Assembly: GCF_963676685.1 (NCBI RefSeq)
Contig: NC_092345.1
Coordinates: 70,308,001 to 70,372,000 of the forward strand
Direction: 5' to 3'
DNA from: Mytilus edulis
Lineage: Eukaryota
DNA length: 64,000 bases
In this document: positions 5,234 to 61,738 of the stretch, piece by piece
Numbering within the stretch: position 1 is the stretch's first letter
How the letters are laid out: the number at the start of each line of letters is the position of its first letter
Made by a program: the position numbers and the translations under genes
The notes under the pieces: generated by a model
Database searches by the model: none
Told to the model about the DNA's origin: nothing
Seen by the model: only the letters and a program-made list of their open reading frames with translations

Positions 5234-8200
5234 TTATTTTTTATTTGGTTCTAAGTATCTTGAAAGTAGAAGATTACTGATATCGAAATCTGCTCTGGTA
5301 ATATTTCCTCGCCTATGATTATCAGCAGAAAATTCTAAAACGGCGTTCATTGCAATTCCTAGCCTTCCAACAAACTCAACTGAAAAAGATGTAAAATTAT
5401 CTCTTGCAGTATACATAAAATACAGAAAGGGATGACGCCCGTCACCCTTTTTCAGTTTTAAAGATCCCTCGGGGCGAATTCGAATCCGTTGATGTGAAGG
5501 TAAAAAAAGATCTCCCGATCTGTATGCCAAGCTGTTTTTCTGTTCTTGATGCTCTAAAAGTACAGAGTCTACACGTTGTTTTAAGCAACATTCTGCAATG
5601 AAATAAATTGTTTTGTCCGTTTTCTTTAGAAAAAACACTAAGACTGTACACAGCATGCGGGTACCATAAAAAGCTTCTAATTCGTCCGTCAGTATTGTTG
5701 TTAGTTTCTTGTGGTCAAGCTGGTTCGGTTTAATTCTAGCAAAAAGCACACTGAAATAAAAATAATTATTGATAGTTTTAACAACCCAATAATCAAAACA
5801 CACAGTTCCAAAGATATATGTATTATTTCAGGAAAGCAGCGTGCCGAAACTATAACAGAAACGAAAGTATTTCAGTATTGCTTGATATTCTTTGAGACGA
5901 GTTTCAAGCTTCTAGTATTGCATATTGCAATAATGACAACTTAGTCAGCTTCAAACAGTGTACGTTATCTTTCTCTTTGAAGGTGTTTTGTCTTTATTAT
6001 AAGAATGGTATTTATTACTATTGATGATTTTAAACCATTTTTTTTTTCTCATGTAAATTTTGTGAGTACTAGATATGTTGAAGGTGATTATTTTTCTATT
6101 GATTCAGTACTTTGCAAATGTCTGATTAACATTAAGCTAAATAGTCACCAACACACTTCATGACTATTAATTATGTGTAACACATCATCATGTTCCAATT
6201 ACTGGTCATCTACACTGGACATATACTAATTAAACCATAAGGAAACAAGTAACGAAGTGATTTTATTTATATCACAGGAACTGACCGAAAGCGCATCAAA
6301 AAGCATCGAAAAAAAAATAGTAGAAAGTTAACGTTCGTTTGTTTCTTTTGACAAGTGTTTAATTGTGGTTGCTTTATAGTGATATTTTTCGTTGTTTGGT
6401 TGTGTTTTTTATAACTTTTTATGCCCCACCTAGGTATCCAGTATACAGATTGGGTGTTTTCATAGTATAACAAAGAAGAAACAAATTTATGATATATATA
6501 GATTTATAAGCTATATGACGACCACGGGCTGGAAAAATGAGAAAATATTTCGGTTTTATTTATAATATGACTTGCTAAGTAATATCATGACATTGCATAA
6601 TCGAAGCGTTGTGAAAATAACCATCATAAAAAATAAAATAAACTTATCGTTATTCTCCTGTGTCTTTAATATTTACCCATCAGAGTCTCGTATTTGACCA
6701 GTATACTCCTTTGTGTCAGTCTTTTTACCTGTTGGAAGAACTACGATTTCACTCTTATTGAAAACAATCATTTTTACGTGAGGATTATCTGAACCAACTA
6801 GTTCTTGGCTACTTTTCGGGTCACTGGTTAGTCTGGCAGAAACACTGATGGGTCCCTTTAGTTGTGTCTTGTTAAAATCTAATGTTATCTTGTGGCTCAC
6901 GGCTTCAACCAATGTCTTAGAATAAACGTCCTTGTTCTCAAGTTTTCCAATAGGTCTTTGTATCTAATAAATATGTTGTAGCAATATAATGTTCACAAAA
7001 GGAGGTGAAATGTTTTTAATTACATTTTTTTCGTGTTTCCAAAATTTCGATTTTGAAACAAAATCTAAGATATTCTGTGGTGTTTGTCGATGATTGAATA
7101 GTTCGTTGTTGTTCTGCGATTTGCATGTTGTGTCGACTATTGTATTATTTGTTTGTCCGTTTCTCTTTGATCACTGTTTTTGCCTGTATTTGTGCTGTAT
7201 TTCTGTCACGTAGTGTTTTCATTTTAACGATATTATTTAACATTGTCATGAAGCAGGAAGTTTGGTTAGCTATTCAACCAGATTCAACCCACCATGTTTT
7301 CTTAAATCGTCCTGTACCTAGTCAGTAATATTGCAGTTGTTATCAAATAGTTCATTTCTATGTATGTTGGCGTTGGTTCCGCTTCCTTTGTTTTCCTCTT
7401 ATAGTTGATGTGTTTTCCTCAGTTTAAGTTGGTAACCCGGACTTGTTTTCTCTCAATCGATTTATGACTTTTGAACTTTGGTATACTACTATTGCCTTTA
7501 TTTAAGATATCGTGTACATGATATAAACCCAGATGAAACATTTGTTTTTATGATATTGTTCTTAAAACACTGACAACAACGACGAACTTAGCAAACATAT
7601 ATTACGTAACGTTAAAGTCAAAACAAACGACTGTCAATCGAATTGACAATAATGGAATTTATGTATTATACTAGTACATGAATTCGGTTATTTTAGTGAA
7701 ACGTGTGTATTTCGTCGTTACAGTGCTTTCTTTGTCATATTTTATTTAGTTGTTAAGATGTACAGTTATGACGTCAAAATTTGAAGTAAACGTTCTTTTT
7801 AACTTTTAGCAGCGAGAGAGCAAAAATAATTAGATGGAAGACTTTTTCGAAAAAAAAACATCCTCCATCCAATATATATAGAAATAAAATAATAAAAGTG
7901 ATATATACATACCATATACTCTATTTTTAGTTCTACCTCTGTACAGCCTTTCGTAAAGTTAACTGTCATGCAATCATTCCCTCCAGTTTTTATCACAGAT
8001 CCCTCAGACTTCACGTCATGTTTAAATTTTTTTGGGCGGGCCACAAGCAAAAAGCTATTCATTCGACAGCATGGAAATTCAATATAGTCAAACTGTCATT
8101 ATAATGAACAATTAGCATTTAATTTCAAAACATCAGTATTTTCAAAAATTTTGTTACAGAATATTTTTTCGTAAAGTACTCGTATACATATACAGTGTTC

Positions 8201-10781
8201 GTAATAACTCGTTCCAACCAGCGTAAAACATCGTTACCTGACTCCGTGGACAATTTAGAGATGATGTTTGTCATTTATTCATTCATGCAGGCGATTGTAT
8301 TCGATCTTGCAAACCGTAAGGGTAAACCTGTGTATGTGTAGGCACAATTCGTAACATTCAGGCAAAAAATGGTGAACATGTTTAGCTTGTTCTAGAATTA
8401 AATACACACTAATCGTAATGTCGTCTAAGTACAGTTATTGCGTCATTATTTTGGTCTTGTTTGTCATTGTTTAGTTAAGTGTTTCTGAATATCAAAATGA
8501 ATTAACATTGTAATATGACCTTAAAGATGTTATGAAGATAAGGTAAGTGTTTTAAAGTGTTTAACTAATATGTGTGTACAAGCATTTGTTTTAATTATAT
8601 AGATACTGGTAATAAAGAAAATATAACGCTTGCCTACACAATTTAAAAGAAGGTAATACGGAGTCCTGTTTCTTTTTCCTGCGTGTTTCAACATATTATT
8701 TGTTATAATTTACAATTGCTTTTAAATATTATGAAAAATAGAAACTAATGAAAAAATTTCAATATGAAGATTTATTGTCATGGTTTGTTAAAGTAATGTC
8801 AAGCCGTTTTTAAAACATTTATGAATCATACATATAACCCAAAATGAAAGAAAAAGGGTATGACAAGGAGAGGCTTAAATATTATAGAAGTTTGTGCAAA
8901 CGTCCGACTTGTATTATGCTAAACTTTATGTGATGAGGTTACCAGTTAATTACCTTTACATATGCTGGCACCTCCTTCCATCTGTTCTCTGCATCTTCAA
9001 TTAGCGCCCAATAATCATTAATGTCGCTGTCCTTGACGAAGGAGTGGTATACCGGAACTTGAAGGTACACTTTCTTCTTATATTTATCGCGGACAGAAAA
9101 TACACACTGTTTTTCTTTAAAACGTTTACTTTCTGAAGGATCGGTCAATTCTTCCAATCCGGGTGTATCAGGTTGGCCTAATAGTCTATATATGTCCGAC
9201 ACCAGCGTGATATGATTTGGAAGACTTACATCATTAAGATAGTCGTCTCTTTCCTTAGATGTCCAATTTTCCACTTTAAAACATTTAAATGGTGCTGAGA
9301 GTTCTGGTTCTGTCCGTAATCTGATCCCCTGCCCTAAAACTACAATACCGTGTCCTTCAACGTAATACAAAAAATCATTCAAAACGTGTGGATCGGGTGA
9401 ATGGTCGACAATCCTGGGGGTGGGTGGTGTTGATGGTCGTTCTGGACTTTCTTCTCTCTTAAATCAAAAACATGACTTTTCAAATAATAATTTATACAAA
9501 TTATCAAATGAAACTTTTTATCGAATGCGTACTTGTCATCCTCCACCTGCTGTGTACCCTAGAGAAATAAGAATCCTTACATACCCGTTCTGATCACCTG
9601 AATCCCTGTCACTTTTAATAAATTTGCATTTCTAAATTGTTATGCCCCCGCATACTTGCATAAAAGGTGCATATCATTTCCGGATAGCATTTCCGGATAA
9701 CTCCCCCTACAGTTTGAATGCTAGGAAGTTTTCACTTTGTTGCTGTTAGTACATATATTGAAGGTGTGCATGTGGTCAGGGTTTTGATTTTTATTAATAT
9801 TTGCTCTTTTGGGAGATAGTTAGACTTTGTCATTTTTGGAGTATATATTACTTGCATAAGAGGTGCATAGCATTTCTGAATAACTCCTCCTACAGTTTGA
9901 ATGCTAGGAAGTTTTCCCTTTGCAGGTTGTATGTACATATATTTAAGGTGTGCATGTGGTCAGGGTTTTGATATTTATTAAAATTTGCTCTTTTGGGAGA
10001 TAGATAAAAAACTTTGTCATTTTTGGAGTATATCGTTATACTTGCATAATAAGTGTATAGAATTTCCGGTTAACTTTTTCATTAGTTTGAATGCTAGGAA
10101 GTTTTCACTATGCAAAAATAGAATTAACTGTAAAAAGTACATATTCCGAAGAACAAATTAAAGAAAATTATAACACGCGAATAAGATGATAATTTACCAT
10201 ATCACTATAGCACAATGACGGGATGTTTAAGTACAGAGACACGTCAAATGGATATTTCCACATATGAACTTAGCAGTAAAAGCTTTATTTATAAAGACAA
10301 ATTAAAGAATACTATAACAATTTATAAGGATGATAATTTATAAACTTGATATGAAAATCTAGAGTTTTGAGTATCGGTATATCATTGTTGATCCTTACTT
10401 ATTTAATTCAGCGTGTATTAAGTATTTGAGTAATTTACTGATATTTGTTTTCCGATATTTGTATTGTGGTAAAAAGTACTTGTTTTTAGTTTCGTACACT
10501 TTTTAAACTTATATATTTACTTTTTATTCCATAGGTCATTCTTAAAATTATGAAACGGTAGTTTTTTCTGCAAGAGCTATTCTAATACTTTATTGCATTT
10601 TATACAGGATTTTATACCGTTTCAAACTATATCATTTGCATATATTTGAAAGGCTGGATTTTTGTTTTACAATAATATTGTTTCCACTGTAAGAAAATAT
10701 TTGTACTTAAAATTAAAAATGATAATTCATTACCTTTTCTGGTCGCGGTTTTGAAGGTCCAAATATACGCGAAAACATCAT
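5234..10781 (-). CDS. Paralogue A: ZU5-ZU5-UPA protein, DTHD1/PIDD-like, no death domain (~511 aa)
   Basis: Exons 10781-10734 (MMFSRIFGPSKPRPEK), 9457-8954, 8092-7913, 6963-6677 and 5750-5234. All introns are GT-AG, phases 0,0,0,2, and the frame is open. Homologous exon by exon to B and C. LVSDIY..VPV..W..VP, EF..RMNSFLLVARP..G..I...V.F.KG and CTVLVFF..AECC..F.LP.HQRIRIRP.G resemble ZU5a, ZU5b and UPA. Confidence 0.8.
9638..10110. mobile_element. Helentron/HINE-like element with ~190-bp tandem core (about 2.5 units)
   Basis: Begins ttgttatgcccccg (DINE/Helentron-like end); the unit start tacttgcataa recurs at ~9653, 9849 and 10039. Lies in intron 1 of paralogue A. Confidence 0.55.
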
Positions 10782-13957: not shown

Positions 13958-16900
13958 TTATTGTTCGTATCGTTCTAGTGTAGTGTTTGATAATATAAGA
14001 CCTCCGACATTTGGATGTTTACTTTCCGTCTCCGAAACGACAGTACTACAATCAGATGGACAATGAATCGAGGAAGCGACGTGATCTACACCTGCTTCTA
14101 TTGATTTCAAATCACTGCTTTTGATAATTTTAACAGTTTCTATTTTGGTGTCTGTTTTAGATGGGTTTTCTCCAGTGTCCAATCGATTTTGAAGAAAGCG
14201 CAAACTGTCTAGATTGAATTCTACTTTCGATATTTCTGTGTAGGTTTTGGTAATGGTGTCTGTTGAAAAGCATAATATTGCATTTGGTGATCCTCCCATT
14301 ATTCTATTTATTTGAACCTGGAAAGTTAAAGCATTTTCACTGGAGACTGACAAGAAAAGCATCCATAAATGAGCACCATTGCCTGGTTTTAATCCAATGC
14401 ATCCTGCCGGACGTATCTTGAATCGTTGGTATGGTGTTAAAAATAAATTCTTTGATTTATGAATAAGAAAGTGTCCTTCTTGTTGTTCCATATTTATCAG
14501 CACTTTGGTCTGGTCTGATCGACAACAATTAACCCTTAGCCGTAATGTTGATGAATTTCTCTTCAGAAAATGAACTAAAATGTTACATAATAGTCTACTG
14601 CCATAAAACAAATTCAATTCATTTGTCAATTTTATCTTAGTGATTTTGTCTTCTTTAATCTTAAGTACTACTGCAAAAGATACTCTGTAAAAATGTAATA
14701 AAGAAGATCAGTTATAATGGTCAAACACAAAACATACAAAAAAGATGAATATTCAAGCATAAACTAGAGTAAAAGCATTCACCCTGTTTAAGTCTACTAA
14801 CTATCTTTTTAAATTGAGTGTGAATTAATGATTTCATTCGACATTTCCATCAATCTCCTCTTTATTTGTATATCTAAATACAAATTTGTCTTTTGTTTTT
14901 TGTTGCACTTCAGTGTTTCTGTTGTTTTGTTGTTTTTCTTTTCTAGTTGATGTGTTTCCCTCGATATAAGTTTGCAACCTGGATTGTTTTCTCTCAATCA
15001 AATTATGCCAGCGAAATACTGCTGGAGCCTTTATATAGTACAACATATTTTAAAATAGGTTTTATTAGATCAATTACTTTAGTTTGTTTAATAAATTTCT
15101 TGCAAACCATGAAAAAGACTTTCAGAACCAAGCATATTACCGTTTGTATTCTTGTCAAATATAGTTAATCATTAAACGTGCTGTTTTCAATGTTTTACAT
15201 CACTGGGTCGATACCTCTGCTGGTGGACTATCAGTCCTCGAGGGTCTAATCAGATCAGTAATCAGTAACAAAATTTTCTAAAATTGTCCGTTTATAGATT
15301 TTGAAATTATCAAGAAACTAAGATTGCAACTCCCTCAAGCAAAGTTGACTTTAGATGAATTTGGCTATCAATTTTAGGTATTTTTGTCATATAGCTCTTC
15401 AACGGTTTCGGTACTTATACATCCTCGGATTTCAAATGTTTGGCTTTGAGCGTTCCTGGTGAAGGTACATCCAGAAAAGCGCTTCGGACGCATTGAAGTT
15501 ATTGAACGTGTTGTTTTCAATTTTTTATTGTATTGTTTTTACATTTTCGTCCTTTGGTTTATTAAAAAAATTGTCTCATTGGCAATTATATCATAAAAGT
15601 TTGAGAATCATAGAATCTTACTTAAGTCTGAAACTTTAAATGTTCGTGGTGATAAAGTACACAACATTTGAATAAAGTTATTATAGAAATCATAAATACC
15701 CGTCATATCCATGTAGAGAACCACTGTAAATATCATCTGCACTCTTCTGCCTGGATTCAACAGTAGAAGCTGATCCATCCTTGTAACCAACCAATATAAT
15801 TTCAATTTGTGACTTATTAGGAGGGTTTAGAGGAATGTTGGTGAGGGATACCACTACCTTTATTGGTTTTAAGAATTTCGACTCATCATATTCAAAGTTG
15901 ACTTTGTTGCTCACATGTTTGACATGTCGTGTAGATGTGTGAATAGTTCTGGAAAACTCAACGTCTGGGGTGTGTACCTAAAACAATTCAAGTACAAAAT
16001 GTTCAGTTATTTGCCAAAAGAGGGACGAAAGATACCAAAGGGACAGTCAAACTCATAAATCTAAAACAAACTGACAACGCCATGGCTAAAAATGAAAAAG
16101 AAAACAGAAAAACAATAGTACACATGACACAACATATAAAACTAAAGAATAAACAACACGAACCCCACCAAAAACTAGGGGTGATCTCAGGTGCTCCGGA
16201 AGGGTAAGCAGATCCTGCTCCACATGTGGCACCCGTCGTGTTGCTTAGGTAGCACTCCACAGTTAGAAAATAAAATTAAAAATGAGCCACAAAATGTTTT
16301 ATCATCTCCTATTCCTGGATTTCTAATACATTTACCTAACTGTTTGTGTTGTACATGTGCATATGTATGTAATCAGTATATTCCATAGATTTGATTTTCA
16401 AAAGTTAAAAGAGTGAAAATAAATTCCTTTTATGTGTATCCATGGCAACATTCTGCATTTATTTACCATAAAATATTGCAAAAAGGGGGGTGGACATGTC
16501 ACATATCCCCCCTAAATTTGGATCAAACTAAAATTTCAATGCCTTTGAGTAATACCTTTTTAGAAACTGTTTTCATAAATCTTCCTAATGATTAAATAAA
16601 AAATGGGGGTCTTTCGCCTCATTTTTTCGTAAAATCCAATCACAAAGTTCGTGCGATAAAAAGTTGGAAAAAAACATTACAATAATTGCTGGACCAATGT
16701 ATGGTAGGGACATGCAAATACGGACTGTCATACAGAAAACAGCCTATATTACATACATTACATACTCTTGATGTTCATATAAACCCAATACAAAGGCTAT
16801 TTTAATACTCAGCTATCCAAAAATTAATTTTATTGCACACTAGCTCTCATATTTGAAAAATCCACAGGGGCCAAAATGCTAAACTACACACCTAACTGTG

Positions 16901-19900
16901 GAGTGCTACCTTATGTAATTACAAATCCGGTAAATAGTCTAATTCGGTAGGTCACATTCATGAAAGGGAAGGGGATTGTAGTTACGACGTAAGGAACATA
17001 TCCGATATCATTTGTGAAACGGTTATTCCATAACGGTCAACAAACTCGTGATGGCGTCCGTAAAATTTACGAAGGGATGATTTCAACTTCACCATTTGGA
17101 ACTCTTGGTTTAATAGCTTCCTTGTGAGCAGTAACCCTCTATCAAGACAATCATGATAGGAAATGCAAGCACGGGAATATCCGATTCGTATCAATTGGGA
17201 GATATATACCCCGGATGCAGGTGCTGCTGGAATGTTGCTACTTAGAAATGGAAAGTTCACAATTGGAAAGCTGAAATCATCTCTTTTGTCGTAAAGTTTT
17301 GTTTTCAACCGACCCTCATTGTCAATTTCTAAATGTAAGTCAAGATATGAAGCCGACTTAACTGTATCCTTTATCTCCAATTCGATGGGATAGATGCGTT
17401 CCACATAGTCACCAAATTTTGCATTGTTCAAAGATGCATATACGATACCATTGAGCAAAATATGTTCATGAACAAAACATTTAGATTATGTATCATCAAT
17501 ATTATGTTGTGAGCTTTTGTTATTAGACCATTTAACCATACACATACCATTGCTTTCTTAAAGAAGTAGGTTAAGTAAGATCACGTTTTGGCCCCAAAAT
17601 ATATCTGTTTCACAAAATTGTTAAAATGTAAACTTTGAGATATTTATTGGAAACTAGATTGCTTCTGCTACATAAATATGGGCAGTTTTTGACAATACAA
17701 TGTACATATATCGGGTACTAGCATCATTAAGTCATGCTAAATTACTGAAATCTTCACAATTTTATCATTAAGTTTTTTTTTAGACGGTTTCCGTCTTAAA
17801 TGAAAGTGGCTGCATTTGTGTTCATTCGTTATATTGAAATGTAAGTTGTATTTGATGATAATACATAACATATATAAAGGTTGAGGATGAACACGGATGC
17901 GGCCACTTTCATTTTTGACAAAAACCATCTGAAAAGTTACATTTTTGGCATATTTGATAGATTTTTTTATATTTAAGCTAGAATCGGAGCGTTTTAAATG
18001 AGTAAATCAGTTAAAATCTTTAAAATAAACTAATCGAATCAACTGAAATAGACACTTAAGTGTTTAAAAAGTGTCTAAAATCGTTCGTCAGATGAACTTG
18101 AAATTTGAGGCCAAAATCGGCCCTTAACAAACCCACTCCTTTGTTGCTGATAGTCTTTCCAGAAAATAAATTAAGATTTATTAAATTGGGTTTACATTTA
18201 TGGTTTTCTACATTAAGTACAATCATAATTATGCCTCATTCAATGTACGGATGTGTGTCTGATTACATTAATAATTCAGAAAACAACGCATCTGATGGTA
18301 AGGTTTTAAAAAGTAAACATCTAATGACTCACATTCAATACTAACCGTATACCTAAAGTTTTCATTTGATTTCACACAATCTTTATCAAACTTTAAAATA
18401 GACGCACAGCTATTCCCAATTTCTATTTCAGTTCCCAATGGATTGATAATCACATTCATCCGCTTTGACTGAATAACTATTCCAAAACTGTTAAGTCGAC
18501 AGCAGTAGAATTCAGCAAAACCATCCTAAATATAAATATATGTTATATGAGTTAGGGTGAGGGCATCAGAGGTATTATACTAGCCATGTTTTGCCTGGAA
18601 CAACAAGACGTATGTCCATTTTCAAATTAAACTTTGAACTGAAAATAACCCTTAGATAAAAAATAAGATGTGATATGATAGCCATGAGACAGCTCACCAT
18701 CCAATTCTTGATGAGTAAAAAGTAAACAATTATTCAAATAGGAAACCAACGGTCTAATCTATATGAAAAATACTTTGATACTCGATTTTGTTTGATAATA
18801 TTTAACAATGGAAGAACTAAATTATTTCATATTTTATAAAACTCAAATACAAAAATACTAAAACTATCAAAGCAACACAAACAAAAGCATACAAAAATTA
18901 TGCCAAAACATGGCAAGTAAAAAAACCATACCGTTCTAAATCTTATAACATTCTTACAGAATTTATTTTGTTTTTAATATTGAAAAAATTGAATTACAAA
19001 AATTTTTAATAAACATGTTTTTTTTATTAAAATAGACAAATCGTTTTTGGAGGACAATACATGTAACTAAAAAAAGATAGTTTCAATTACATTACATTTT
19101 GGGAATGTTCTATTGCTGATAATATCTGTCGATTTATTAGAGAATTAAAGATAAAAAGCATAACTTACAGTAGATTGATTTTAAAATACTTCATGAAAAA
19201 TAAATTCACAATTTCTTAGCACCTAAAATATAAACTAAACTATCTAAGCTATTTAAAATTTGTTGCTGTTCAAATTGTATAAGGCAAATAACCAAAAAAT
19301 GTTTTAATCGATTACTGAACACATTTCATAAAATGAATGAAAATGTTGTGGTCATTACATTGTATTCTATTTTAGAAATTTAATCATAACATTTTGTTTT
19401 GATTCATGACAATAATTGATCATTCAATATGACTTTCTTCAATTACCTTTTTAACTAGTTTTATACTTGTATAGATGTTAGTGAAACGTTTATATTTTCA
19501 TAGTTTAATTTTCAATAGAATCAACAGCTTCAAGAACAACTTATTGCGATAAATCTGAACAAGAAATGCTAAACTACAAACAGGAGGACATTTGGGTATA
19601 TTTTAGTAAGACATTAACCCAAATATTCAAAGACAACAAAATACTTTTATAAGTATAGGTATGTAGCAAAATTTACCTTAACCGTGGCTGGAAGCATTTT
19701 CCATACTAATCCGTCATTTATCCAAGCAAAAGCCTCGTAAAATTGACTCCCAGTTTTTTCAAAGAAAGTATTTATAATGTTGACACTAAAACACACTTTG
19801 TCATTAAACTGGGAGGGTAAATTGAATTTATCTAATTTTTCCTTCTGAATTTTAACACAAGGGTTTCCTGTTTCTCCTTTCTGTCGTTGAACAGTTCTGA

Positions 19901-22808
19901 AGATATCAGACACAAATATTGACTCCAAAGGAAGGTTTAGGAATTTGAGTGAATTATTTTTCTCATCTGCTGTCCATTTGGTGGTTATAAATCCATTTAA
20001 AATACTATATAAACTGCTTGGACCTGTAATACTAACATCATTTCCCAAGTTGATATTACATGTAGTAGTGCATGTTGTAAGTTCTGAATCATCTTGTTCA
20101 AAGTCGGATGAATAGCAGTCATCACTTGAGTTTCTATCTTCCATTCCAATTATTCTTATCTTTTATCAAAATAAAGGAATGAAGTAAGATTGACAATGAA
20201 CAAACTTTTTATACATGTAAGATCCATATACAAATATATGAACATATATTCTAGATCATCATATGGTATATAACAATTAGAAAACTCATATAGTAATGTA
20301 AGCTATTATAATGAATAAATATAACAAAAGGCCCCTGCCAGAATGACAAAATTTGGTAAAAAAAACCAAATGAGAATTAAAAACTAATTGTTCAAAGAAC
20401 AATTGAAGGTCTTTCCATCCCCAAATGATCATATTTTGATACGAGATTACCAAAAGCTAGTTTAAATAGTCATATGTGGTGTCAGACGATAGCTTACTTG
20501 AAGCGTGTCCCAAAAATATATGATTTGTATATGTTGTGTACAAGTTATCATTTTGTACAAAAAAATTGTACAAATTATAATTTGTATTTTGACTGTGTAC
20601 ATATTGTAATTTGTACAAAAAGTGCCTGTACAAATTATAATTTGTACAAAATAAGGCTTAATTTCACTTATAGCTTATACAATATTGTATATATAATAAA
20701 TTTCAAATTAAATGATAAAAAATATTTTCAATTTTAATTACTAAATTACTTGAATCAATATGAAACACACTTGATAACTCTATTTACAATACTATACAAT
20801 ACTATACAATAATATACAATGCTCTTATTTGTTGGAGCAGGTGAGCGAACTATGACACCTTGAATTACACAATACATTCTGTTTTTTTGCATTTACACTT
20901 CGAATTGTTACAACCTCCTTTACATTTGCAATAGAGAAAACCCTGTCCACCAGTTCTTGAATTTTTTTTCACAGCTTCCCTTAGAGAAAGTTGCAAATCT
21001 GGAATTTGTGTAACGGACAAAGAAGAGACACAACTTGATTCTACTTGGTTTCTGCTTAAGACTACTGATAAATTACCAGCTATTGTCCCAACACAGTGAT
21101 CAAAATTTCCTACTTCTACAACAACAACACCTTGTATATTTCTCGGGTCGGTTGGTGCTCGGTCATATTGTGGTATTGGAATAATAACATTGTCTCCAAC
21201 AGCTAATTCACTCAGTTTCTGTTTTGTATTTTTTGTAAGGACATCTGCTTGTATTTGTTGGCCCGACAATGCATGTTTTCTTGCACGAATGATCGGTGTT
21301 TCCACTTCCTCTGATACAACTTCAATGGTTGTACTAGTTGACCCAGAATCGTTCAGTTCTCTTTCTGATTCTACCGATTCAGCATCTGTGTTTTCATCCG
21401 TACAATCATCTCAATTTTACTGTTCTCCTCTGAAACCTCTTTAAACACTTTCTCCAAATCTTCCCCAGTTTCACGATTTGGCAAAAGTTCCTTTGGCAAA
21501 GAAGATGAAGATAAACCTATCTTTGGGTCAGAACCAAACAGAGCGTTATAAGGTGATTGATCAATTACTCTGTGATATGATCTATTTTTCTGAAATTGCA
21601 CGAAGCGCAAACCTTCAGACCACTGTTGTGTGTCATTGTCATCCATGATATGAGCATTTCTTTAATGTCAGCATTTGCTCTTTCTACAGACCCTTGACTT
21701 TAGGGATGTCTTGGTCGGCCATGAACTATGACTAATTCTGACCATAACGATTTTAGTTCTGTGATTATATGTGCACTGAACTCTCTCCCATTATCGCTTT
21801 GGAGGATATGGGGTGCACCAAAGAGAAGAATAATGTCAAGTAATTGATACGAAACTTAAGCAGCTCTCTTATTTCAGAGCTCTAAGCACGCTAAATTTGG
21901 TGAGATGATCTTGATAGTGCATTATCCAATTAAATTCATGGTCAGGGACAGATTGATGGTCTACAAGGTCAACCTGCCCTCTAAAGTTGAAGTCATCAGA
22001 AATTATAGGTTTAACAACAAGTTTTGATATGTCAGAACGTTTTCGTTTCAAGATACATTGTTCACAATTGGTTGTGAGTATGCGTATTGCTTCCTGGATA
22101 ATGTTAGAAAAATGTTTTTTGAGTTCTTTGTTAGTTTTATGGAGACCTCCATGACCGACCCTTTTCAATATCAGAAACTTCAATAACATCATATTTCTTT
22201 AGCAAATGTCTGTCTTGGTCACTTTTCTTCAGTGCCTCTATTGCATTTTTAACTTTAGAAATTAACTCATTCAATTTGTCCCTGGTATACAGATATTTGT
22301 GCTTAGATGTGTTATTCTCAGCAAATTGCTGAACTTCTTGGTAAAATTTATCATGTTGATCAACAATACTAGCCATTTTTTTAACACCTTAACTTTTACT
22401 TTTGTTAATGACCATATGAAGGACCATTGAACAAGAGTCCAATTTATAACCTCAAGGCAATATAAATGAATCAATTTATGACTTTAAAAATAGCACTGAA
22501 AAGTTTTAAAGTGGGTATCAACACTTTTGTTATCACAATATCCATATGATAAATTATTGTACAAGTTATAAGTGAAATTAAGCCTTATTTTGTACAAATT
22601 GTAATTTGTACAAGCACTTTTTGTACAAATTATAATTTGTACAAAATGATAACTTGTACACAACATATACACTTTTGCTTAAAAAAAAAGTCATGTGTAT
22701 TTCTAAATGCAAAAGACCCTACGTCACACACTTCTGGAAATAAAAAAATATTACCTTATAGTGTACAGGTATTTTATCAGAGACAAGCGCCTCTGTATAT
22801 AGGCACAT
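13958..22808 (-). CDS. Paralogue B: ZU5-ZU5-UPA protein, DTHD1/PIDD-like, no death domain (~550-573 aa)
   Basis: Exons 20159-19677, 18525-18346 (180 nt), 15977-15700 and 14684-13958, GT-AG, with the same phases as A. The candidate first exon 22808-22755 (MCLYTEALVSDKIPVHYK, phase 0) is less certain; the alternative start is ATG 20144. Confidence 0.75.
15171..15525 (+). mobile_element. Non-LTR retrozyme copy (~330-nt unit) with type I hammerhead at 15448-15492 (core mutated to CTGGTGA)
   Basis: Direct repeat attaaacgtgctgttttcaat (15171) / attgaacgtgttgttttcaat (15501); HHR GCGTTC-CTGGTGA-AGGTACATCCA-GAAA-AGCGCT-TC^GGACGC; shares the cactgggtcgat..ggtgga motif with the 24306 retrozyme. Confidence 0.7.
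16016..17430 (-). mobile_element. 5'-truncated Penelope-like retroelement (RT C-terminus plus 3' terminal region), interrupted by a MITE
   Basis: ORF 16982-17458 has SASYLDL..KLYDKRDDFSFPIVNFPFLSSNIP..GVYISQLIR (PLE-type RT). Near-identical copies at 51770-52636 and 63370-63870. Confidence 0.85.
16248..16910. mobile_element. MITE with 19-bp TIR GGTAGCACTCCACAGTTAG and TTA duplication
   Basis: TIRs at both ends; flanks tta|...|tta; uninterrupted host site at ~63601-63630; second copy at 38939-39604. Confidence 0.85.
17575..18127. mobile_element. Probable non-autonomous DNA transposon
   Basis: Imperfect inverted ends taagatcacgttttggcc / ggccaaaatcggccctta; no clear TSD. Confidence 0.4.
20526..22671 (-). 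mobile_element. Decayed Ginger2/TDD-type DNA transposon (KRBA2/SCAND3-like DDE integrase)
   Basis: TIRs of ~120-160 bp with TGT...ACA termini. Frameshifted minus-strand coding (~20825-22376) has GHGG...CxxC, RGQVDLVD, YQDHLTKF, FGAPHILQSDNGREF, SQGSVERAN, WSEGLRFVQF..N and a C-terminal CxCxxxCxxxxCxC motif. Confidence 0.85.
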
Positions 22809-27016: not shown

Positions 27017-27356
27017 GCCGTCTTCAATTGGTGTTTTTATGATATTATGCAGCATCAAACTGGCAGTTTGTTCTATTTCCTGTTCGATCTGTTCACAATT
27101 TTTTATTATGGAACTTTTATAGCTTACTTTTCGGTTTCAATTTTGTGTCAAATGTTATGGTGAAAAACTATTCGTAAATAAAACGTATTATTTTTAACCT
27201 TAGGATATATTAAACTGAGAAACAAATGTCTCATTGAAGCCTTTTTAAGTCAAATCTTTATTATGCTTATACAATTTGTATGGTCTACATTCGAAATGCC
27301 AGTGTTTTCACTGTTTCCTTATAATGCACAGACGTTTTGGTTTCTTGAAAATAGAA

Positions 27357-42300: not shown

Positions 42301-43658
42301 AGTCGTTTAATCCCTCGTCTGAATCCGATTCAAATTCCTCCCCAGAGTATGTTTCACCAAGACAATCATCAAGTCTGAAGTCGTCGTCTACCTCGTCGTT
42401 GACAACTACACCGTCTTCTTCTTCACGTATTGCCCTGAAAATTATAATCTAAATGCAAAATCATTTCATCTGATGGCTATTATTTTTATTAGCACGAACA
42501 TGATGAAATTAAGATCTGTCTTTTATTTTACAAAATTTAACGACTATATTTAAAAATAAGAAGTATGATCTGAGACAACTCTCAATCAGTGATGTTAGAA
42601 TTACAAAAAAGAGTATCATTTCACTATTTGTGTATCATCCAACTGCTGTCTCCATCATATAATGGCACGACTTAATTATGTAATATGAACGTTTGACGAA
42701 TCAGGGGAAAAGTTTTAAAATAATCTTATTAACATGACATCAGCGAATGAGTCTTATCGTAGTGTTTGTAACTACAAGCTTAAGACACATGACGAATGTC
42801 TCTAGTGGAGCAGGATCTGTTTACTTTTCCAGAGCACATGGAAATTGCTGGTGGCGTCGTGATCCTTAGTCTTTAAAATAATAATTAGTTTTCTGTGTTG
42901 TGTTTTTTCGATTTGACTGGTTTTTCGTCGTTTTTTATTACGTTTTGTATCTTCTGTATCTGAGCTATTAAAAGTCTCTTTTGTAAACTTCTATCTTTTT
43001 TTTAAACAAAATACTCATATATTAAAAGAAAAAAGATAAGGTCATCTATTCTTTAGACACAAACAAAAACTAATAATTTCTTTCTATAAACATGACATTT
43101 GATTTAATGCTGAAATCAACAATATTTCAAGTCAGCAGAAGAGTGCTTACGAGTGGTGATATTTTTGCAACGAAACATCTAAACGCAGTGGCAACAACCA
43201 ATTTGTTTCCATATACTATATCAAAATACATATGATCATGATTTAGTACGTAAGACTCGTTCTAAATTGTAACTGTGGAGTTGTATTTTAAGATGCTCGT
43301 TTTTATACCGTGTGGAACATCGATCACACATGGCCAAAAAAACACTGTCCCGTTCTATGAAATACCTGTGTTTCTTATATTTATATTTGGTTCGTGTGTC
43401 GTAATCTTTCGGTCCTTATCAGTGTTTTTTGCATTGTCCGTTTAAACGATCTTCTGTTCTAAATATAAATAAAATGAATCAGTTAGTTTCTGTTTCCAAA
43501 ACAAGTACTCAGATAGCAAATATCTCAATAACAAATAAGATAACTTACTGTTGCACCATGTACGGCTGATGTGATTGTATGTTGACAAGACTTCCTCTAA
43601 AAATATTTCTTGGTGTTCTAACAATTTGTCCCAGTTTCCTAGCGGAACTCTCCGCCAT
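27357..43658 (-). CDS. Paralogue C: ZU5-ZU5-UPA protein, DTHD1/PIDD-like, acidic N-terminus, no death domain (~577 aa)
   Basis: Exons 43658-43549, 42434-41861, 34428-34249 (180 nt), 31211-30931 and 27945-27357; all GT-AG, phases 2,0,0,2, open frame; homologous to A, B and D. Confidence 0.8.
28030..28360. repeat. Abundant dispersed SINE-like repeat, copy 1
   Basis: Near-identical to 29140-29551 and 36732-37053 (ccccgccgcatttttgcgcctgtcccaagtcaggagcctctggcc...). Confidence 0.8.
28375..29105. repeat. Degenerate 26-bp minisatellite, split by a MITE
   Basis: Units such as gatacagcagta..tacgtcaat at 28375-28545 and 28990-29105 match the 61830-63270 array. Confidence 0.65.
28547..28981. mobile_element. 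MITE (same family as 53197-53649)
   Basis: Ends ggcccgataacccagttat / ataattgtgtccttggac; collinear similarity to 53197-53649. Confidence 0.75.
29140..29551. repeat. Abundant dispersed SINE-like repeat, copy 2
   Basis: Collinear with copies at 28030 and 36732. Confidence 0.8.
29714..30309. mobile_element. TTAA-flanked MITE (Kolobok-like)
   Basis: TTAA|GGTGGTATGGGTGTCT...AGACTCCCATACCACC|TTAA. Confidence 0.8.
30491..30536 (-). ncRNA. Type I hammerhead ribozyme, third sequence type, core mutated (CTAAAGA)
   Basis: Minus strand GAGCATCA-CTAAAGA-GACATGTACTGTC-GAAA-TGCGCA-TC^TGGTGC; stems I-III pair with covariation relative to the 24630 copy. Confidence 0.65.
32163..33215. mobile_element. Element bounded by two direct copies of a ~140-bp palindrome
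   Basis: 32163-32306 and 33055-33198 are direct repeats, each an imperfect hairpin centred on gggcctttaggccc. Confidence 0.65.
33229..33677. mobile_element. ~450-bp foldback MITE (palindromic over its full length)
   Basis: atagtatgaaattcaaaacagtgtgg... pairs with ...ccacactgttttgaatttcattctat all the way to a centre at ~33452. Confidence 0.85.
36396..36440 (-). ncRNA. Type I hammerhead ribozyme (intact core) in a retrozyme fragment
   Basis: Minus strand GAGCGTCA-CTGATGA-GTTTTCGTAGAC-GAAA-CGCGTG-TC^TGGCGT; both strands of stem I present. Confidence 0.85.
36500..37206. mobile_element. PIF/Harbinger-like MITE (TAA TSD) containing a SINE-like repeat
   Basis: TAA|TACCGGCGTCACACAT...ATGTGTGACGCCGGCA|TAA; SINE-like copy inside at 36732-37053. 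Confidence 0.75.
38572..38752 (+). mobile_element. Retrozyme fragment with decayed hammerhead (38668-38713)
   Basis: gagcgtcg-ATGATGA-gtcttttgtagac-GAAA-tgcgca-TC^tggcgt; collinear with the 3' half of 24306-24693. Confidence 0.7.
38939..39604. mobile_element. MITE, second copy of the 16248-16910 family
   Basis: Same TIRs and collinear interior. Confidence 0.85.
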
Positions 43659-45448: not shown

Positions 45449-45450
45449 AA

Positions 45451-45492: not shown

Positions 45493-45495
<3 letters not shown>

Positions 45496-51769: not shown

Positions 51770-52636
51770 GAGTTGTCAAGTATCTAACTCTCTTTCATCT
51801 TGTAACAGTATTAAACATTTGACTTTTCTACTCTGTACACAAGTATTCCACATTCCAAACTAAAAGACAAATTGAAAGAGTTGGTATTACTTTGCTTCAT
51901 AAAAAAGAATGGCCAACGCAGATACAAGTATCTTGTCTTAGGGAGGGATAAATCCTACTTTGTAAAGAATCACTCTGATTCAAACAAAAAATTCTCTGAA
52001 ACTGATATTATCAAGATGTTTGATTTCTTGATTGACAACATATTTGTTACGTTCGGAGGACGTGTTTTTCAACAGACTGTCGGCATTCCAATGGGAACAA
52101 ACTGTGCCCCTCTACTCGACGACTTGTATCTTTATTATTATGAGGCTGACTTCATGCAGGAACTTCTTAGGAAGAAAGATAAGAAGTTAGCAATATTCTT
52201 TAACTCTACTTTCCGCTATATAGATGATGTTCTTTCACTAAACAATTCAAAATTTGGTGACTATGTGGAACGCATCCATCCAATCGAACTAGAGATAAAG
52301 GATACTACAGATACAGTTAAGTCGGCTTCATATCTTGACTTACATCTAGAAATTGACAATGAGGGTCGGTTGAAAACAAAACTTTACGACAAAAGAGATG
52401 ATTTCAGCTTTCCAATTGTGAACTTTCCGTTTCTAAGTAGCAACATTCCAGCAGCACCTGCATACTCGGTATATATCTCCCAATTGATACGATATTCCCG
52501 TGCTTGCATTTCCTATCATGATTTTCACCCCTAGTTTTTGATGGGGTTCGTGTTGTTTATTCTTTAGTTTTCTATATTGTGTCGTGTGTACTATTGTTTT
52601 TCTGTTTGTCTTTTTAATTTTTAGCCATGGCGTTGT
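51770..52636 (+). mobile_element. Penelope-like retroelement RT fragment with internal deletion
   Basis: ORF 51872-52534 with QTVGIPMGTNCAP, FRYIDDV and YLDL; at ~52525 it jumps to 3' terminal sequence. Confidence 0.9.
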
Positions 52637-55256: not shown

Positions 55257-55271
55257 CTAGCAATAAAAAAT

Positions 55272-57230: not shown

Positions 57231-57242
57231 TTTATTTTACAG

Positions 57243-61212: not shown

Positions 61213-61738
61213 TTAATGGATAGAGTTTGCTCGACTCAAATTCTGTCTTTGATTCCCACTTGACAGAAAATCTAAACTGAAGTCCGCTTTTGTAATTTCT
61301 CCTCTTCTTTGGTTATCTGCTGAAAATTCTATAACAGCATTCGTTGGTTTGCCCATTCCTCTGTTTAATTCAACGGAAAACAACGTGTTATTCTCTTTTG
61401 CGACATACATGAAGAACAGAAATGGATGATTTGTTCTTCCAGGTTTGAGTCCTAAACAACCAGTTGGCCAAATACGAATCCTTTGATGTGGAGGTAGTAA
61501 AATATCCCCAGATTCGAAAATAAGTTTGTGGTCCTTGTGTTTAGCAATTATGTCATCAGAATTTCGTTGCAAACAGCACTCAGCTTTAAAATATAAAGTT
61601 GTATTATTTTTCTCGTGATAGAATAATAAAACTTTGCACAACTTTCGATTTCCGTAAATTAAATCCAGTTCGTTTTTTAATCTTTCAGCAAAATTTTCAT
61701 CTTCCTTCTGTCCACGTTTAATTGCAACAAAGGCTGCC
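61213..61738 (-). CDS. Paralogue D: last exon (UPA-like domain); remaining exons are beyond the window end
   Basis: Acceptor ggtctttttcag| identical to paralogue C, phase 2; protein highly similar to the last exon of C; earlier stop. Confidence 0.75.

What the first reader, a model, noticed from the sequence alone, without database searches (positions are those of the whole stretch)
5234..61738. Tandem array of at least four divergent ZU5-ZU5-UPA genes that all lack a death domain
Seen: three complete co-oriented genes and the last exon of a fourth. They share intron positions and phases (an invariant 180-nt phase 0-0 exon, then a phase 0-2 exon) and have open frames, although A, B and C have diverged strongly. 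Known: the ZU5/UPA supramodule of ankyrins, PIDD1, UNC5 and DTHD1 is normally followed by a death domain. Inference: these proteins stop shortly after the UPA-like domain and have no LRR, ankyrin or TM region. They may be an expanded, uncharacterised family of stand-alone ZU5-ZU5-UPA scaffolds, sensors or decoys, possibly in bivalve immune or cell-death signalling.
Basis: partly seen in the sequence, partly recalled or inferred. Interest (0 to 1): 0.78.

Follow-up and report, generated by a model that had tools for sequence, protein, structure and literature searches.

The report
Mussel ZU5-ZU5-UPA genes without death domain
Four neighbouring mussel genes encode proteins with the three-domain ZU5-ZU5-UPA core known from ankyrins and the cell-death protein PIDD, but they have lost the death domain that normally passes the signal on, so they probably act as scaffolds or brakes, which is untested.

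Summary
On the minus strand lie three complete paralogous genes (A, B, C) and the last exon of a fourth (D). D's other exons lie just past the window's right end. All share a 180-nt phase 0-0 exon followed by a phase 0-2 exon, canonical splice sites and open frames.

Pfam and single-sequence searches do not recognise the proteins. Three other lines show a ZU5-ZU5-UPA core:
- A Mytilus-only profile finds 71 relatives; all 20 whose names I looked up are molluscan.
- The enlarged profile hits the ankyrin-B ZU5-ZU5-UPA-DD structure 4D8O at E 6e-24.
- A confident AlphaFold2 model of a full-length orthologue (pLDDT 83.8, pTM 0.81) matches 4D8O (Foldseek E 5e-18; VIA-align Z 15.7). It also matches ankyrin-R ZU5A-ZU5B, UNC5b and the NLRP1/CARD8 FIIND.

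No death domain follows. All four genes stop 10-75 residues after the UPA. No death-domain-like frame lies in the window or 50 kb of flanks. Transcript contigs of gene C run through the stop to a poly(A) signal. Seventeen relatives in other clades keep a death domain, so loss is likely. The autoproteolysis serine is also absent.

C and D are under purifying selection (dN/dS 0.29). The family is small, about ten loci in this genome. Function is untested. This is a new variant of a known kind.

The parts
10734..10778 (-). Gene A exon 0 (ATG at 10778, 45 nt)
   Evidence: Exact match to the first 14 residues of P0014, a M. galloprovincialis model of gene A. GT donor.
8954..9457 (-). Gene A exon 1: short disordered N-terminal region plus most of ZU5-1
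   Evidence: Paralogous to C E1 at 35%. P0014 matches at 98.8%. AG acceptor and GT donor.
7913..8092 (-). Gene A exon 2: 180 nt, phase 0-0; end of ZU5-1 and start of ZU5-2
6677..6963 (-). Gene A exon 3: 287 nt, phase 0-2; body of ZU5-2
5234..5750 (-). Gene A exon 4 with TAA stop at 5236-5234: last strand of ZU5-2, the UPA, and a tail of about 10 residues
   Evidence: P0014 is 100% identical here. Family profile E 1e-53.
19677..20144 (-). Gene B exon 1 (ATG at 20144): N-terminal region plus most of ZU5-1
   Evidence: Relative P0013 (M. galloprovincialis LOC143064400, 554 aa) starts at the same Met. GT donor.
18346..18525 (-). Gene B exon 2: 180 nt, phase 0-0
15700..15977 (-). Gene B exon 3: 278 nt, phase 0-2
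13958..14684 (-). Gene B exon 4 with TAA stop: UPA plus a Ser/Thr-rich tail of about 75 residues
   Evidence: Family profile E 2e-45. The family DD HMM does not hit the tail.
43549..43658 (-). Gene C exon 0 (ATG at 43658, 110 nt)
   Evidence: 100% identical to P0007 residues 1-37. GT donor.
41861..42434 (-). Gene C exon 1: acidic disordered region plus most of ZU5-1
   Evidence: P0007 matches at 95%. AG acceptor and GT donor.
34249..34428 (-). Gene C exon 2: 180 nt, phase 0-0; absent from RefSeq isoform X2 (P0007)
   Evidence: The equivalent exon is joined to E3 in the Logan contig product P0001.
30931..31211 (-). Gene C exon 3: 281 nt, phase 0-2
   Evidence: P0007 matches at 99%. It is spliced to E4 in contigs of 3 of 4 runs.
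27357..27945 (-). Gene C exon 4 with TAA stop at 27359-27357: UPA plus a tail of about 30 residues
   Evidence: P0007 matches at 99%. Joint 27944->30930 in contigs.
27240..27356 (-). Gene C 3' UTR, with an AATAAA signal near 27255
   Evidence: Contigs of the four runs end at 27240-27379, and depth is about 0 in bin 27096-27241. Sequence read.
61213..61738 (-). Gene D exon 4 with TAA stop; the other exons lie beyond the window's right end
   Evidence: 82% identical to C E4 and 92% to P0006. Upstream exons found in L001.

Best explanation
The window holds a four-gene tandem array. It comes from a Mytilus genome, probably the M. edulis reference assembly.

Protein layout. Each gene encodes a cytosolic protein of about 510-580 residues. 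A disordered N-terminal region comes first; in the C/D type it is about 90 residues and strongly acidic. Two ZU5 beta-sandwich domains and a UPA domain follow, then a short tail and a stop. Exon 1 plus the first third of the 180-nt exon make ZU5-1. The rest of that exon, exon 3 and the first roughly 20 codons of exon 4 make ZU5-2. The remainder of exon 4 is the UPA.

Origin (inferred). The genes belong to a family found so far only in molluscs. Many members in other clades carry a C-terminal death domain. The mussel clade most likely lost that domain once, before the A/B/(C,D) duplications.

Cleavage (inferred). The residue after the buried Phe at the end of each ZU5 is Gly, Leu, Val or Ala, not Ser. 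The proteins should therefore stay in one piece, unlike PIDD, NLRP1 and CARD8.

Shown here: gene structure, fold, absence of a death domain in the DNA and in gene C's transcript contigs, and purifying selection on C and D.

Function (inferred, about 35% likely in this form). With the ZU5/UPA binding and oligomerising surfaces but no death-fold output, the proteins act as non-signalling adaptors or competitive brakes. They would bind the partners or the UPA/ZU5 surfaces of death-domain-bearing relatives and limit assembly of death-domain platforms.
For: Gene structure and paralogy.

Fold:
- AlphaFold2 model of P0006 with a 78-row alignment: mean pLDDT 83.8, pTM 0.81, residues about 90-550 mostly above 90.
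- Foldseek: 4D8O E 5e-18, 6M3Q 1e-17, UNC5b 3G5B 5e-9, 3UD2 8e-8, NLRP1 7CRW 9e-8.
- VIA-align: 4D8O Z 15.7 (383 aligned, model 91-542 against chain 976-1423); 3UD2 Z 13.8 (model 92-408); 7CRV_B Z 11.9; 3F59 Z 9.2 (model 245-387); 6X6A_G Z 8.7 (model 410-534).

Sequence:
- The Mytilus-only profile A1 finds 71 proteins at E<=1e-3 and 34 at E<=1e-10 among 1.84 billion.
- All 20 that I looked up by name are molluscan.
- The enlarged profile A3 hits ankyrin-B 4D8O at E 6.4e-24 and ankyrin-1 at 2e-21.
- ESM Atlas neighbours are ZU5/UPA, DTHD1 and FIIND clusters at 0.94-0.90.

No death domain:
- Searches find none in the DNA.
- The stops lie 10-75 residues after the UPA.
- Spliced contigs of 3 of 4 runs join E3 to E4, and contigs run through the stop to about 27240, next to an AATAAA.

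Death domain in relatives:
- Pfam Death in 4 of 34 scanned.
- The family DD HMM hits 17 representatives and none of the Mytilus A-D clade.

Clade: 8 of 8 A-D-type proteins form one 100/100 clade, all without a death domain.

Selection: C against D, dN/dS 0.29 at dS 0.47 over 508 codons.

No nucleophile: alignment columns. The motif requirement comes from passages of PMC3210808.

UPA oligomerisation: abstract and passages of PMC7794386.
Against: - Pfam's ZU5, UPA and UPA_2 models do not reach threshold on any exon or on P0001-P0006.
- The Mytilus-only profile alone finds nothing in the PDB, so the sequence link to ankyrin is transitive.
- Global superposition on ankyrin-B is poor (TM 0.35-0.40, rmsd about 10-11 A). 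The three domains may be packed differently.
- The folded protein is an orthologue of gene D, 82-95% identical per exon.
- RNA was examined only for gene C, only as assembled contigs, in runs whose RNA status is a guess. Contigs cannot exclude a rare isoform, and 41 further joints were not shown.
- Some relatives scored as lacking a death domain may be truncated gene models.
- Nothing bears directly on function.
Confidence: 0.82

Rival explanations
1. The death domain is present but missed. It would be encoded by a distant or very divergent downstream exon and used in some isoforms, so the genes would be ordinary ZU5-ZU5-UPA-DD genes.
For: - Seventeen relatives carry a death domain.
- Contigs cannot show absence, and 41 joints were not listed.
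- The genome-wide Death scan scored 150 of 217 candidates.
- A non-significant DD-HMM match (E 0.48) lies on the minus strand in L005, about 9.5 kb beyond gene A's stop.
Against: - Four diverged paralogues all reach an in-frame stop 10-75 residues after the UPA.
- The models of M. galloprovincialis, M. trossulus, M. edulis, M. coruscus and M. californianus examined here also end there (named).
- Contigs read through gene C's stop to a poly(A) signal.
- Nothing reaches significance in the window's 2,087 six-frame segments or the 50 kb of flanks. This holds for the profile with DD columns and for the DD HMM.
- No Pfam Death match lies within 3.7 Mb on this contig.
Confidence: 0.05
2. The array consists of decaying relics (pseudogenes) of death-domain genes, transcribed but without function.
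For: - The death domain and the cleavage serine are gone.
- A related copy on contig C797 has a frameshift in exon 4.
- Several gene models skip the 180-nt exon.
Against: - Fourteen of 14 coding exons in the window, and D's 3 further core exons outside it, are open; D's exon 0 was located only by tblastn.
- All 23 splice sites checked are canonical.
- C against D gives dN/dS 0.29 with dS 0.47.
- A, B and C are saturated at silent sites yet keep 32-39% protein identity and a confidently predicted fold.
- M. galloprovincialis has close relatives of A (P0014), B (P0013, P0085) and C (P0007); the A and B models lie on one contig.
Confidence: 0.05
3. The proteins are cytoskeletal adaptors of the ankyrin type. 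They would bind spectrin or membrane proteins through ZU5-1 and have nothing to do with immune or death signalling.
For: - The best structural and profile matches are ankyrin ZU5-ZU5-UPA.
- Ankyrin's ZU5 domains do not self-cleave, as these probably do not (recalled for ankyrin; for the mussel proteins).
Against: - No ankyrin repeats are present.
- Identity to ankyrin is only 11-13%.
- The nearest sequence relatives are small death-domain proteins, not ankyrins.
- Conservation of the spectrin-binding surface was not tested.
Confidence: 0.12

Closest known systems
Ankyrin-B/G/R ZU5N-ZU5C-UPA(-DD) supramodule (PDB 4D8O, 6M3Q, 6M3R, 3UD2)
   Same: Same order of three domains. It is the best structural match (Z 15.7, 383 residues aligned) and the best profile match (E 6e-24). 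No cleavage serine (for the mussel proteins; recalled for ankyrin).
   Different: No ankyrin repeats in front and no death domain or regulatory tail behind. Sequence identity is 11-13%. The global fit is poor (rmsd about 10 A), so the domain packing may differ.
PIDD1 (LRR-ZU5-ZU5-UPA-DD)
   Same: A ZU5-ZU5-UPA core. Sequence relatives of the mussel proteins in other molluscs carry a C-terminal death domain as PIDD1 does.
   Different: No LRR and no death domain. The HFS cleavage motifs are replaced by SF-G or SF-L at ZU5-1 and by (F/L)-(V/A) at ZU5-2 (motif from PMC3210808 passages). No PIDD1 ZU5-UPA structure appeared among the listed matches; only its death domain did.
FIIND of NLRP1 and CARD8 (ZU5-UPA-CARD)
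   Same: The ZU5 and UPA folds match (7CRV_B Z 11.9; 6X6A_G UPA Z 8.7; 7JN7_B Z 9.7). CARD8 also has a disordered N-terminus before its ZU5 (abstract of PMC9213247, search listing).
   Different: Two ZU5 domains, not one. No CARD. The second serine of SF/S, which is required for cleavage, is absent.
UNC5 cytoplasmic ZU5-UPA-DD (PDB 3G5B)
   Same: ZU5-2 plus UPA align (Foldseek E 5e-9; Z 8.2 over model 250-537).
   Different: No ectodomain or transmembrane segment, an extra ZU5, and no death domain.
Molluscan 'uncharacterized' or 'Death domain-containing' proteins (Haliotis XP_046573588.1, Lottia XP_009053806.1, Mizuhopecten XP_021373777.1, Potamilus KAK3607505.1, M. galloprovincialis VDI43617.1)
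   Same: True sequence relatives. E-values run from 1e-25 to 1e-4 against the Mytilus-only profile over ZU5-1 (C-terminal part), ZU5-2 and UPA. Names.
   Different: These keep a death domain of about 90 residues after the UPA. The window clade does not.

Membership tests
ZU5-ZU5-UPA supramodule proteins (ankyrin/PIDD type) | Two consecutive ZU5 beta-sandwich domains followed by a UPA domain | tested here: met
   AlphaFold2 model of P0006 (pLDDT 83.8, pTM 0.81). Matches: 4D8O Z 15.7 over model 91-542; 3UD2 (ZU5A-ZU5B) Z 13.8 over 92-408; isolated ZU5 3F59 Z 9.2 over 245-387; NLRP1 UPA 6X6A_G Z 8.7 over 410-534. Foldseek E 5e-18.
ZU5-ZU5-UPA supramodule proteins (ankyrin/PIDD type) | Sequence homology to known ZU5/UPA domains | tested here: inconclusive
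   Met only transitively. Profile A3 (78 rows, with distant relatives) hits ankyrin-B at E 6.4e-24. Not met directly: Pfam ZU5, UPA and UPA_2 give no hit on exons or on P0001-P0006. PF00791 does not match the window. The Mytilus-only profile finds nothing in the PDB.
ZU5-ZU5-UPA supramodule proteins (ankyrin/PIDD type) | Death domain directly after the UPA | tested here: not met
   Stops lie 10-75 residues after the UPA. There is no Pfam Death match in the window. Nothing significant comes from the DD columns of A3 or the family DD HMM in the window or flanks. Contigs read through gene C's stop.
ZU5-ZU5-UPA supramodule proteins (ankyrin/PIDD type) | Compact three-lobed packing as in ankyrin-B | tested here: inconclusive
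   pTM 0.81 suggests a defined packing. The global fit to 4D8O is poor, however (TMq 0.35, rmsd 9.9-11.2 A).
Autoproteolytic ZU5 proteins (PIDD1, NLRP1/CARD8 FIIND, UNC5CL) | HFS or SFS motif, with the serine after the buried Phe as nucleophile | tested here: not met
   At the end of ZU5-1: NSF-L in A's exon-2 product (P0038), and xSF-G in P0013 (B-type) and in P0006, P0010 and P0011 (C/D-type). At the end of ZU5-2: F/L followed by V or A. The window's own exon translations show the same residues. The requirement for the second serine is from PMC3210808 passages. The correspondence of positions comes from sequence alignment, not from a residue-level structural alignment.
Ankyrins | N-terminal ankyrin-repeat membrane-binding domain | tested here: not met
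   Pfam finds no Ank in P0006. Residues 1-90 of the model are disordered.
UNC5 netrin receptors | Ig/TSP ectodomain and a transmembrane helix before the ZU5 | tested here: not met
   No Pfam domains. The maximum 19-residue Kyte-Doolittle mean is 1.24 in six family proteins.
Pfam PF00791 (ZU5), PF17217/PF17809 (UPA) | Score above the curated gathering threshold | tested here: not met
   The only UPA_2 hits are in Haliotis relatives and fall below the cut-off (17.3 and 14.6 bits against 22.7).

The most novel reading that the evidence does not exclude
The A-D clade is a set of dedicated, non-cleavable, death-domain-less decoys. Through UPA-UPA or ZU5-UPA contacts they would cap or sequester the death-domain-bearing ZU5-UPA-DD sensors that mussels still encode (for example the M. 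galloprovincialis relative VDI43617.1). That would set the threshold for assembly of a PIDDosome-like platform. It would be a genome-encoded counterpart of the way full-length FIIND plus DPP9 restrains free UPA-CARD in vertebrates. The divergence of A, B and C (32-39% identity) would then reflect specialisation for different sensor partners.
Probability: 0.15. Interest if true: 0.72.

Novelty: new variant of a known kind. Interest (0 to 1): 0.5.

Why it matters
ZU5-UPA modules are known as the regulatory front end of a death-fold output: a death domain in ankyrin, UNC5 and PIDD1, or a CARD in NLRP1 and CARD8. Here an expressed and conserved clade keeps the whole ZU5-ZU5-UPA core but has dropped both the output domain and the self-cleavage serine.

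That makes it a natural separation-of-function experiment. It can show what the ZZU core does alone: binding, oligomerisation or inhibition. It also adds a candidate negative regulator to the much-enlarged death-fold signalling repertoire of bivalves.

In practice, these proteins carry no Pfam domain and the named database entries for them read 'uncharacterized', 'hypothetical' or 'unnamed'. The profile built here can annotate them and their molluscan relatives.

Tried and rejected
Searches that found nothing useful:
- Pfam on single exon ORFs (6, 8) and on P0001-P0004. There were no ZU5, UPA or Death hits, only chance hits below cut-off. The domains are split across exons, so exon-wise scans are weak.
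- phmmer of P0001 against PDB sequences: nothing.
- The Mytilus-only profile A1 against the PDB: one chance hit at E 1.7. Only the enlarged profile A3 reaches ankyrin.
- Word search with exon 4 and with P0001: only Mytilus proteins, none with a Pfam domain.
- Pfam on nine other ORFs of the window: one weak RVT_1 hit only.

Literature:
- The first search was too loose, because it did not require ZU5, and was useless.
- 'ZU5' with 'bivalve' (3 papers), with 'Mytilus' (1 paper) and with 'mollus' (7 papers) returned no paper that describes a death-domain-less ZU5-ZU5-UPA family, judged from titles and abstracts in the listings and from the ZU5 passages of PMC8195603 and PMC6641155.
- In PMC6641155 the single ZU5 mention is a 'titin-like' ZU5+DEATH shell-proteome entry.
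- In PMC8195603 the ZU5 passages concern TRADD-N fusions.
- These searches cover only the held library. Supplementary files were not requested.

Readings considered and rejected:
- Pseudogenes, a hidden death-domain exon, and an ankyrin-type cytoskeletal role are treated under the rivals.
- The family DD HMM does not hit gene B's longer tail (about 75 residues). It could not be folded.

dN/dS for A-B, A-C and B-C is not interpretable, because silent sites are saturated.

The tree used 36 of the 82 proteins then held. I dropped rows whose match to profile A1 did not span positions <=170 to >=425, and the three cluster members P0080-P0082. The root is at the midpoint only, so 'loss' rests on the death domain in the ankyrin/PIDD/UNC5 outgroups, not on the tree.

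Full report
**What is in the sequence**

All four genes are on the minus strand. The ORF list shows four long last-exon ORFs at 5234-5803, 13958-14629, 27357-27959 and 61213-61863. I ran an all-against-all BLASTP of the minus-strand stop-free segments. It finds four exon families shared by three genes, plus the last exon of a fourth:
- E4: C-D 82%, A-C 45%, B-C 37%, A-B 33%.
- E1: A-C 35%, B-C 24%, A-B 27%.
- E2: B-C 39%, A-C 37%, A-B 30%.
- E3: A-C 30%, B-C 29%.

I read the splice sites from the DNA and checked them against database proteins. E2 is 180 nt, phase 0-0, in A (8092-7913), B (18525-18346) and C (34428-34249). E3 is 287, 278 and 281 nt, phase 0-2. Twelve of 12 acceptors are AG and 11 of 11 donors are GT. 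The exons sum to 510 (A), 550 (B) and 577 (C) codons without a stop.

A and C also have a short first coding exon (10778-10734 and 43658-43549). B starts at an ATG inside E1, as does its M. galloprovincialis counterpart P0013 (LOC143064400).

Gene D's E3, E2, E1 and E0 lie in the first 6 kb beyond the window and are open. The array has exactly four members in this assembly.

**Which organism**

- P0007 (M. galloprovincialis LOC143064403 isoform X2) is 95-100% identical to gene C's exons.
- P0014 (M. galloprovincialis) is 100% identical to gene A's E4.
- A family member on a 34,685-nt contig is named as M. edulis XP_071151335.1. Contig C797 of this genome has exactly that length.
- Earlier notes of this scan call the genome blue mussel.

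I take it as a Mytilus edulis-complex genome. In M. galloprovincialis the A and B models carry adjacent accessions on one contig (VDI76835.1 and VDI76836.1). The B and C RefSeq loci lie on one chromosome-scale record. The array is therefore at least partly conserved.

**How the proteins were identified**

Pfam sees nothing on single exons or on partial or full proteins. The Pfam ZU5 model has ten matches in the genome and none in the window.

The word search gave Mytilus proteins that serve as full-length stand-ins.
- P0006 (M. edulis, 561 aa) has all exons. It is 92%, 82%, 95% and 86% identical to gene D's E4, E3, E2 and E1.
- P0001 is the product of a 1,416-nt Logan contig. It reads without a break from the second half of E2 through E3 into E4, which supports those junctions.

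I built profile A1 from Mytilus proteins plus the window's exons as separate rows (505 positions). I searched it against 1.84 billion representatives. It found 71 proteins at E<=1e-3, 34 at E<=1e-10 and 10 at E<=1e-30.

All 20 that I looked up by name are molluscan: Haliotis, Lottia, Mizuhopecten, Ylistrum, Pinctada, Saccostrea, Tegillarca, Potamilus, Sinanodonta and Mytilus. They are named 'uncharacterized', 'hypothetical', 'unnamed' or, for a few, 'Death domain-', 'ZU5 domain-' or 'SAM domain-containing'.

**Link to known domains**

There are three lines of evidence.

1. Sequence profile. A1 alone finds nothing in PDB sequences. The 78-row profile A3 hits ankyrin-B ZU5-ZU5-UPA-DD 4D8O at E 6.4e-24, with profile positions 99-478 aligned to chain positions 171-578. 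It also hits ankyrin-1 at 2e-21 and ankyrin-B/G at about 1e-18. The link is transitive. The death-domain columns of A3 come from the distant relatives, not from the mussel clade.

2. Structure. AlphaFold2 on P0006 with A3 gives mean pLDDT 83.8 and pTM 0.81. Ten-residue block means over residues 90-540 are above 85, apart from one dip to 70. Residues 1-90 and 552-561 are disordered.
   - Foldseek ranks 4D8O first (E 5e-18, 486 columns). Next come AnkB and AnkG complexes, UNC5b 3G5B (5e-9), ankyrin-R ZU5A-ZU5B (8e-8), NLRP1 FIIND (9e-8) and CARD8 (6e-4). Unrelated beta-rich proteins appear only from about 5e-4.
   - VIA-align gives 4D8O Z 15.7 (383 aligned, rmsd 9.9, model 91-542 against chain 976-1423). 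3UD2 scores Z 13.8 (model 92-408).
   - NLRP1 FIIND 7CRV_B scores Z 11.9 (rmsd 2.9). Isolated ZU5 3F59 scores Z 9.2 (model 245-387). NLRP1 UPA 6X6A_G scores Z 8.7 (model 410-534), and UNC5b scores Z 8.2 (model 250-537).
   - The domains are therefore ZU5-1 at about 91-245, ZU5-2 at about 248-408 and UPA at about 410-541.
   - Global TM-scores are low (0.35-0.40), so the mutual packing may differ from ankyrin-B.

3. Language-model neighbours. The nearest ESM Atlas clusters of P0006 are ZU5/UPA, UNC5B, DTHD1 and FIIND clusters at 0.94-0.90. This is a lead only.

Mapped onto exons:
- E1 carries the disordered head and most of ZU5-1.
- The 180-nt E2 carries the last strands of ZU5-1 and the first strands of ZU5-2.
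- E3 is the body of ZU5-2.
- E4 carries the last strand of ZU5-2, the whole UPA and a short tail.

**No death domain**

- The four E4s reach a stop about 10 (A), 75 (B), 30 (C) and 15 (D) residues after the UPA.
- Pfam Death has 139 matches in the genome, with 150 of 217 candidates scored. None lies in the window. The nearest on this contig are about 4 Mb and 3.7 Mb away.
- The A3 profile, which contains death-domain columns, was run against all 2,087 six-frame segments of the window. It finds exactly the 13 expected exons (E 4e-64 to 1e-10). The next hit is at E 0.4, inside gene C's first intron.
- The same profile finds only gene D's three exons in the 50 kb of flanks.
- I seeded a family-specific death-domain HMM from the four Pfam-recognised domains. 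It finds a death domain in 20 of 82 family proteins. These are 17 representatives plus 3 cluster members; two hits are partial. It finds none in the Mytilus A-D clade. Its best hits in the window and flanks are E 0.29 and E 0.48, which are not significant.

**RNA**

Twenty runs hold gene C's E4. Fourteen of them have contig totals typical of transcriptomes but are only guessed to be RNA. I laid four of these runs, from four studies, on 26950-31300.
- Contigs of 3 of the 4 runs (X1, X3, X7) join 27944 to 30930. They skip 2,985 nt with CT..AC ends, which is GT..AG on the minus strand. This is exactly the E3/E4 junction.
- Contigs cover E4, and in three of the four runs (X1, X2, X3) they pass through the stop (27359-27357). 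They end at 27240-27379.
- The next bin (27096-27241) has about zero depth.
- An AATAAA lies near 27255.
- No joint leaving E4 downstream is listed, but 41 joints were not shown. Contigs cannot exclude rare isoforms.
- Genes A, B and D were not examined.

**Are they functional genes?**

For C against D, per-exon Nei-Gojobori counts give dN/dS of 0.22-0.36 per exon. The figure is 0.29 overall, at dS 0.47 over 508 codons.

The other pairs are saturated at silent sites. Those duplications are old, yet frames, splice sites and fold-defining residues persist. Pseudogenes are therefore unlikely.

**History**

A maximum-likelihood tree of 36 family proteins puts all eight A-D-type Mytilus proteins in one clade (100/100). 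None of them has a death domain. The clade sits on a long stem among relatives with and without the domain. The trait needs at least 8 changes on the tree, and 4 by well-supported branches alone.

The homologous modules of ankyrin, UNC5 and PIDD carry a death domain, and death-domain-bearing members occur on both sides of the tree. I therefore infer one loss before the A/B/(C,D) duplications. The tree itself is unrooted. Some rows scored as lacking the domain may be truncated models.

**Family size in this genome**

E4 has 11 six-frame matches:
- four in the array;
- two C/D-like copies on the unplaced contig C797, one of them frameshifted and so counted twice;
- two A-like copies at C2:32.90 and 32.97 Mb, 90% identical to each other and 58% to A;
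- two distant ones at C2:101.2 Mb and C5:35.7 Mb.

That makes about ten loci, a modest family.

**Cleavage**

PIDD and Nup98 cleave at HFS, and CARD8 and NLRP1 at SF/S. The serine after the buried Phe is required. This comes from the abstract and passages of PMC3210808.

In the family alignment, the strand that ends ZU5-1 reads SF-G in the B-, C- and D-type proteins and SF-L in the A type. The strand that ends ZU5-2 reads F or L followed by V or A. No family member shows HFS.

I infer that the proteins do not self-cleave. The equivalence of positions rests on sequence alignment, not on a residue-level structural superposition.

**How it most likely works**

Shown: a soluble protein with a disordered head and a ZU5-ZU5-UPA core. 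In P0006 the head has 26 Asp+Glu against 5 Lys+Arg in the first 92 residues. No hydrophobic stretch looks like a membrane helix. There is no death-fold output.

From the literature: the UPA of NLRP1 and CARD8 self-oligomerises and lowers the threshold for CARD filament formation (abstract and passages of PMC7794386).

Inferred: the mussel proteins keep the binding and oligomerising surfaces but cannot nucleate a death-domain assembly. They would act as adaptors or competitive inhibitors of death-domain-bearing relatives. Mytilus still has such a relative: P0032, VDI43617.1, with a death domain by the family HMM at E 4e-27. I put this at about 35%, an ankyrin-like cytoskeletal role at about 12%, and leave the rest open.

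**Novelty**

The library searches I ran returned no paper that describes such a family. The named database entries for the A-D clade are 'uncharacterized', 'hypothetical' or 'unnamed' and carry no Pfam domain.

The domains and the supramodule are known. What is new is a conserved, expressed clade that keeps ZU5-ZU5-UPA and has lost both the death domain and the cleavage serine. It is a new variant of a known kind.

**Limits**

- The folded protein is an orthologue, not a window gene.
- RNA evidence is from contigs, for gene C only.
- Function is untested.

Noticed in passing
window 61835-63267: A satellite with a 26-bp unit, 55 copies, 78% matches. It fills most of the window's part of gene D's last intron, just upstream of its exon 4, and creates long spurious minus-strand ORFs.
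   Followed up: partly
window 34249-34428 (and 7913-8092): The 180-nt phase 0-0 exon is missing from RefSeq isoform X2 of gene C (P0007), from the M. trossulus model P0008 and from the gene A model P0014. In the model it encodes six beta-strands that span the ZU5-1/ZU5-2 boundary. Skipping it would break both domains. Whether skipping really happens was not tested.
   Followed up: partly
G000 contig C797 (L006 753-1373; L007 664-1346): An unplaced 34.7-kb contig carries two more C/D-like last exons. One is intact (84% to C) and belongs to XP_071151335.1. The other is split by a frameshift (89% to D). It could be a divergent haplotype or a presence/absence variant of the array.
   Followed up: partly
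window 27972-28409, 29140-29577, 30454-30599: Stretches inside gene C's E3-E4 intron collect contig depths in the thousands in all four runs, with many loose ends and odd joints. They are probably highly expressed or high-copy repeats.
   Followed up: no
window 51872-52534 (+), 16982-17458 (-), 26545-26907 (-): Three ORFs share a near-identical peptide stretch. The first has a weak, below-threshold RVT_1 hit (E 0.0098). They are probably retroelement fragments scattered between and inside the genes.
   Followed up: partly
window 54100-56946 (+): A run of four plus-strand ORFs of 172-257 aa lies in a stretch with strong GC skew (0.30 and 0.21). The first is a Lys/Glu/Ser-rich ORF. Pfam found nothing in the three that were scanned. 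It is possibly a mobile element between genes C and D.
   Followed up: partly
window 2338-3564 (+): A 408-aa ORF rich in Gln, Asn, Pro and Ser with internal repeats. It lies downstream of gene A on the other strand and has no Pfam hit.
   Followed up: no
window 24306-24693: An earlier first-stage note (s1-838944) reports a 357-nt hammerhead retrozyme monomer here, between genes B and C. I did not check it.
   Followed up: no
G000 C2:101225564-101226274 (+) and C5:35746397-35747044 (+): Two distant UPA-type exons (25-34% identical to the array's E4). They may belong to relatives in this genome that keep a death domain. Their downstream exons were not examined.
   Followed up: no
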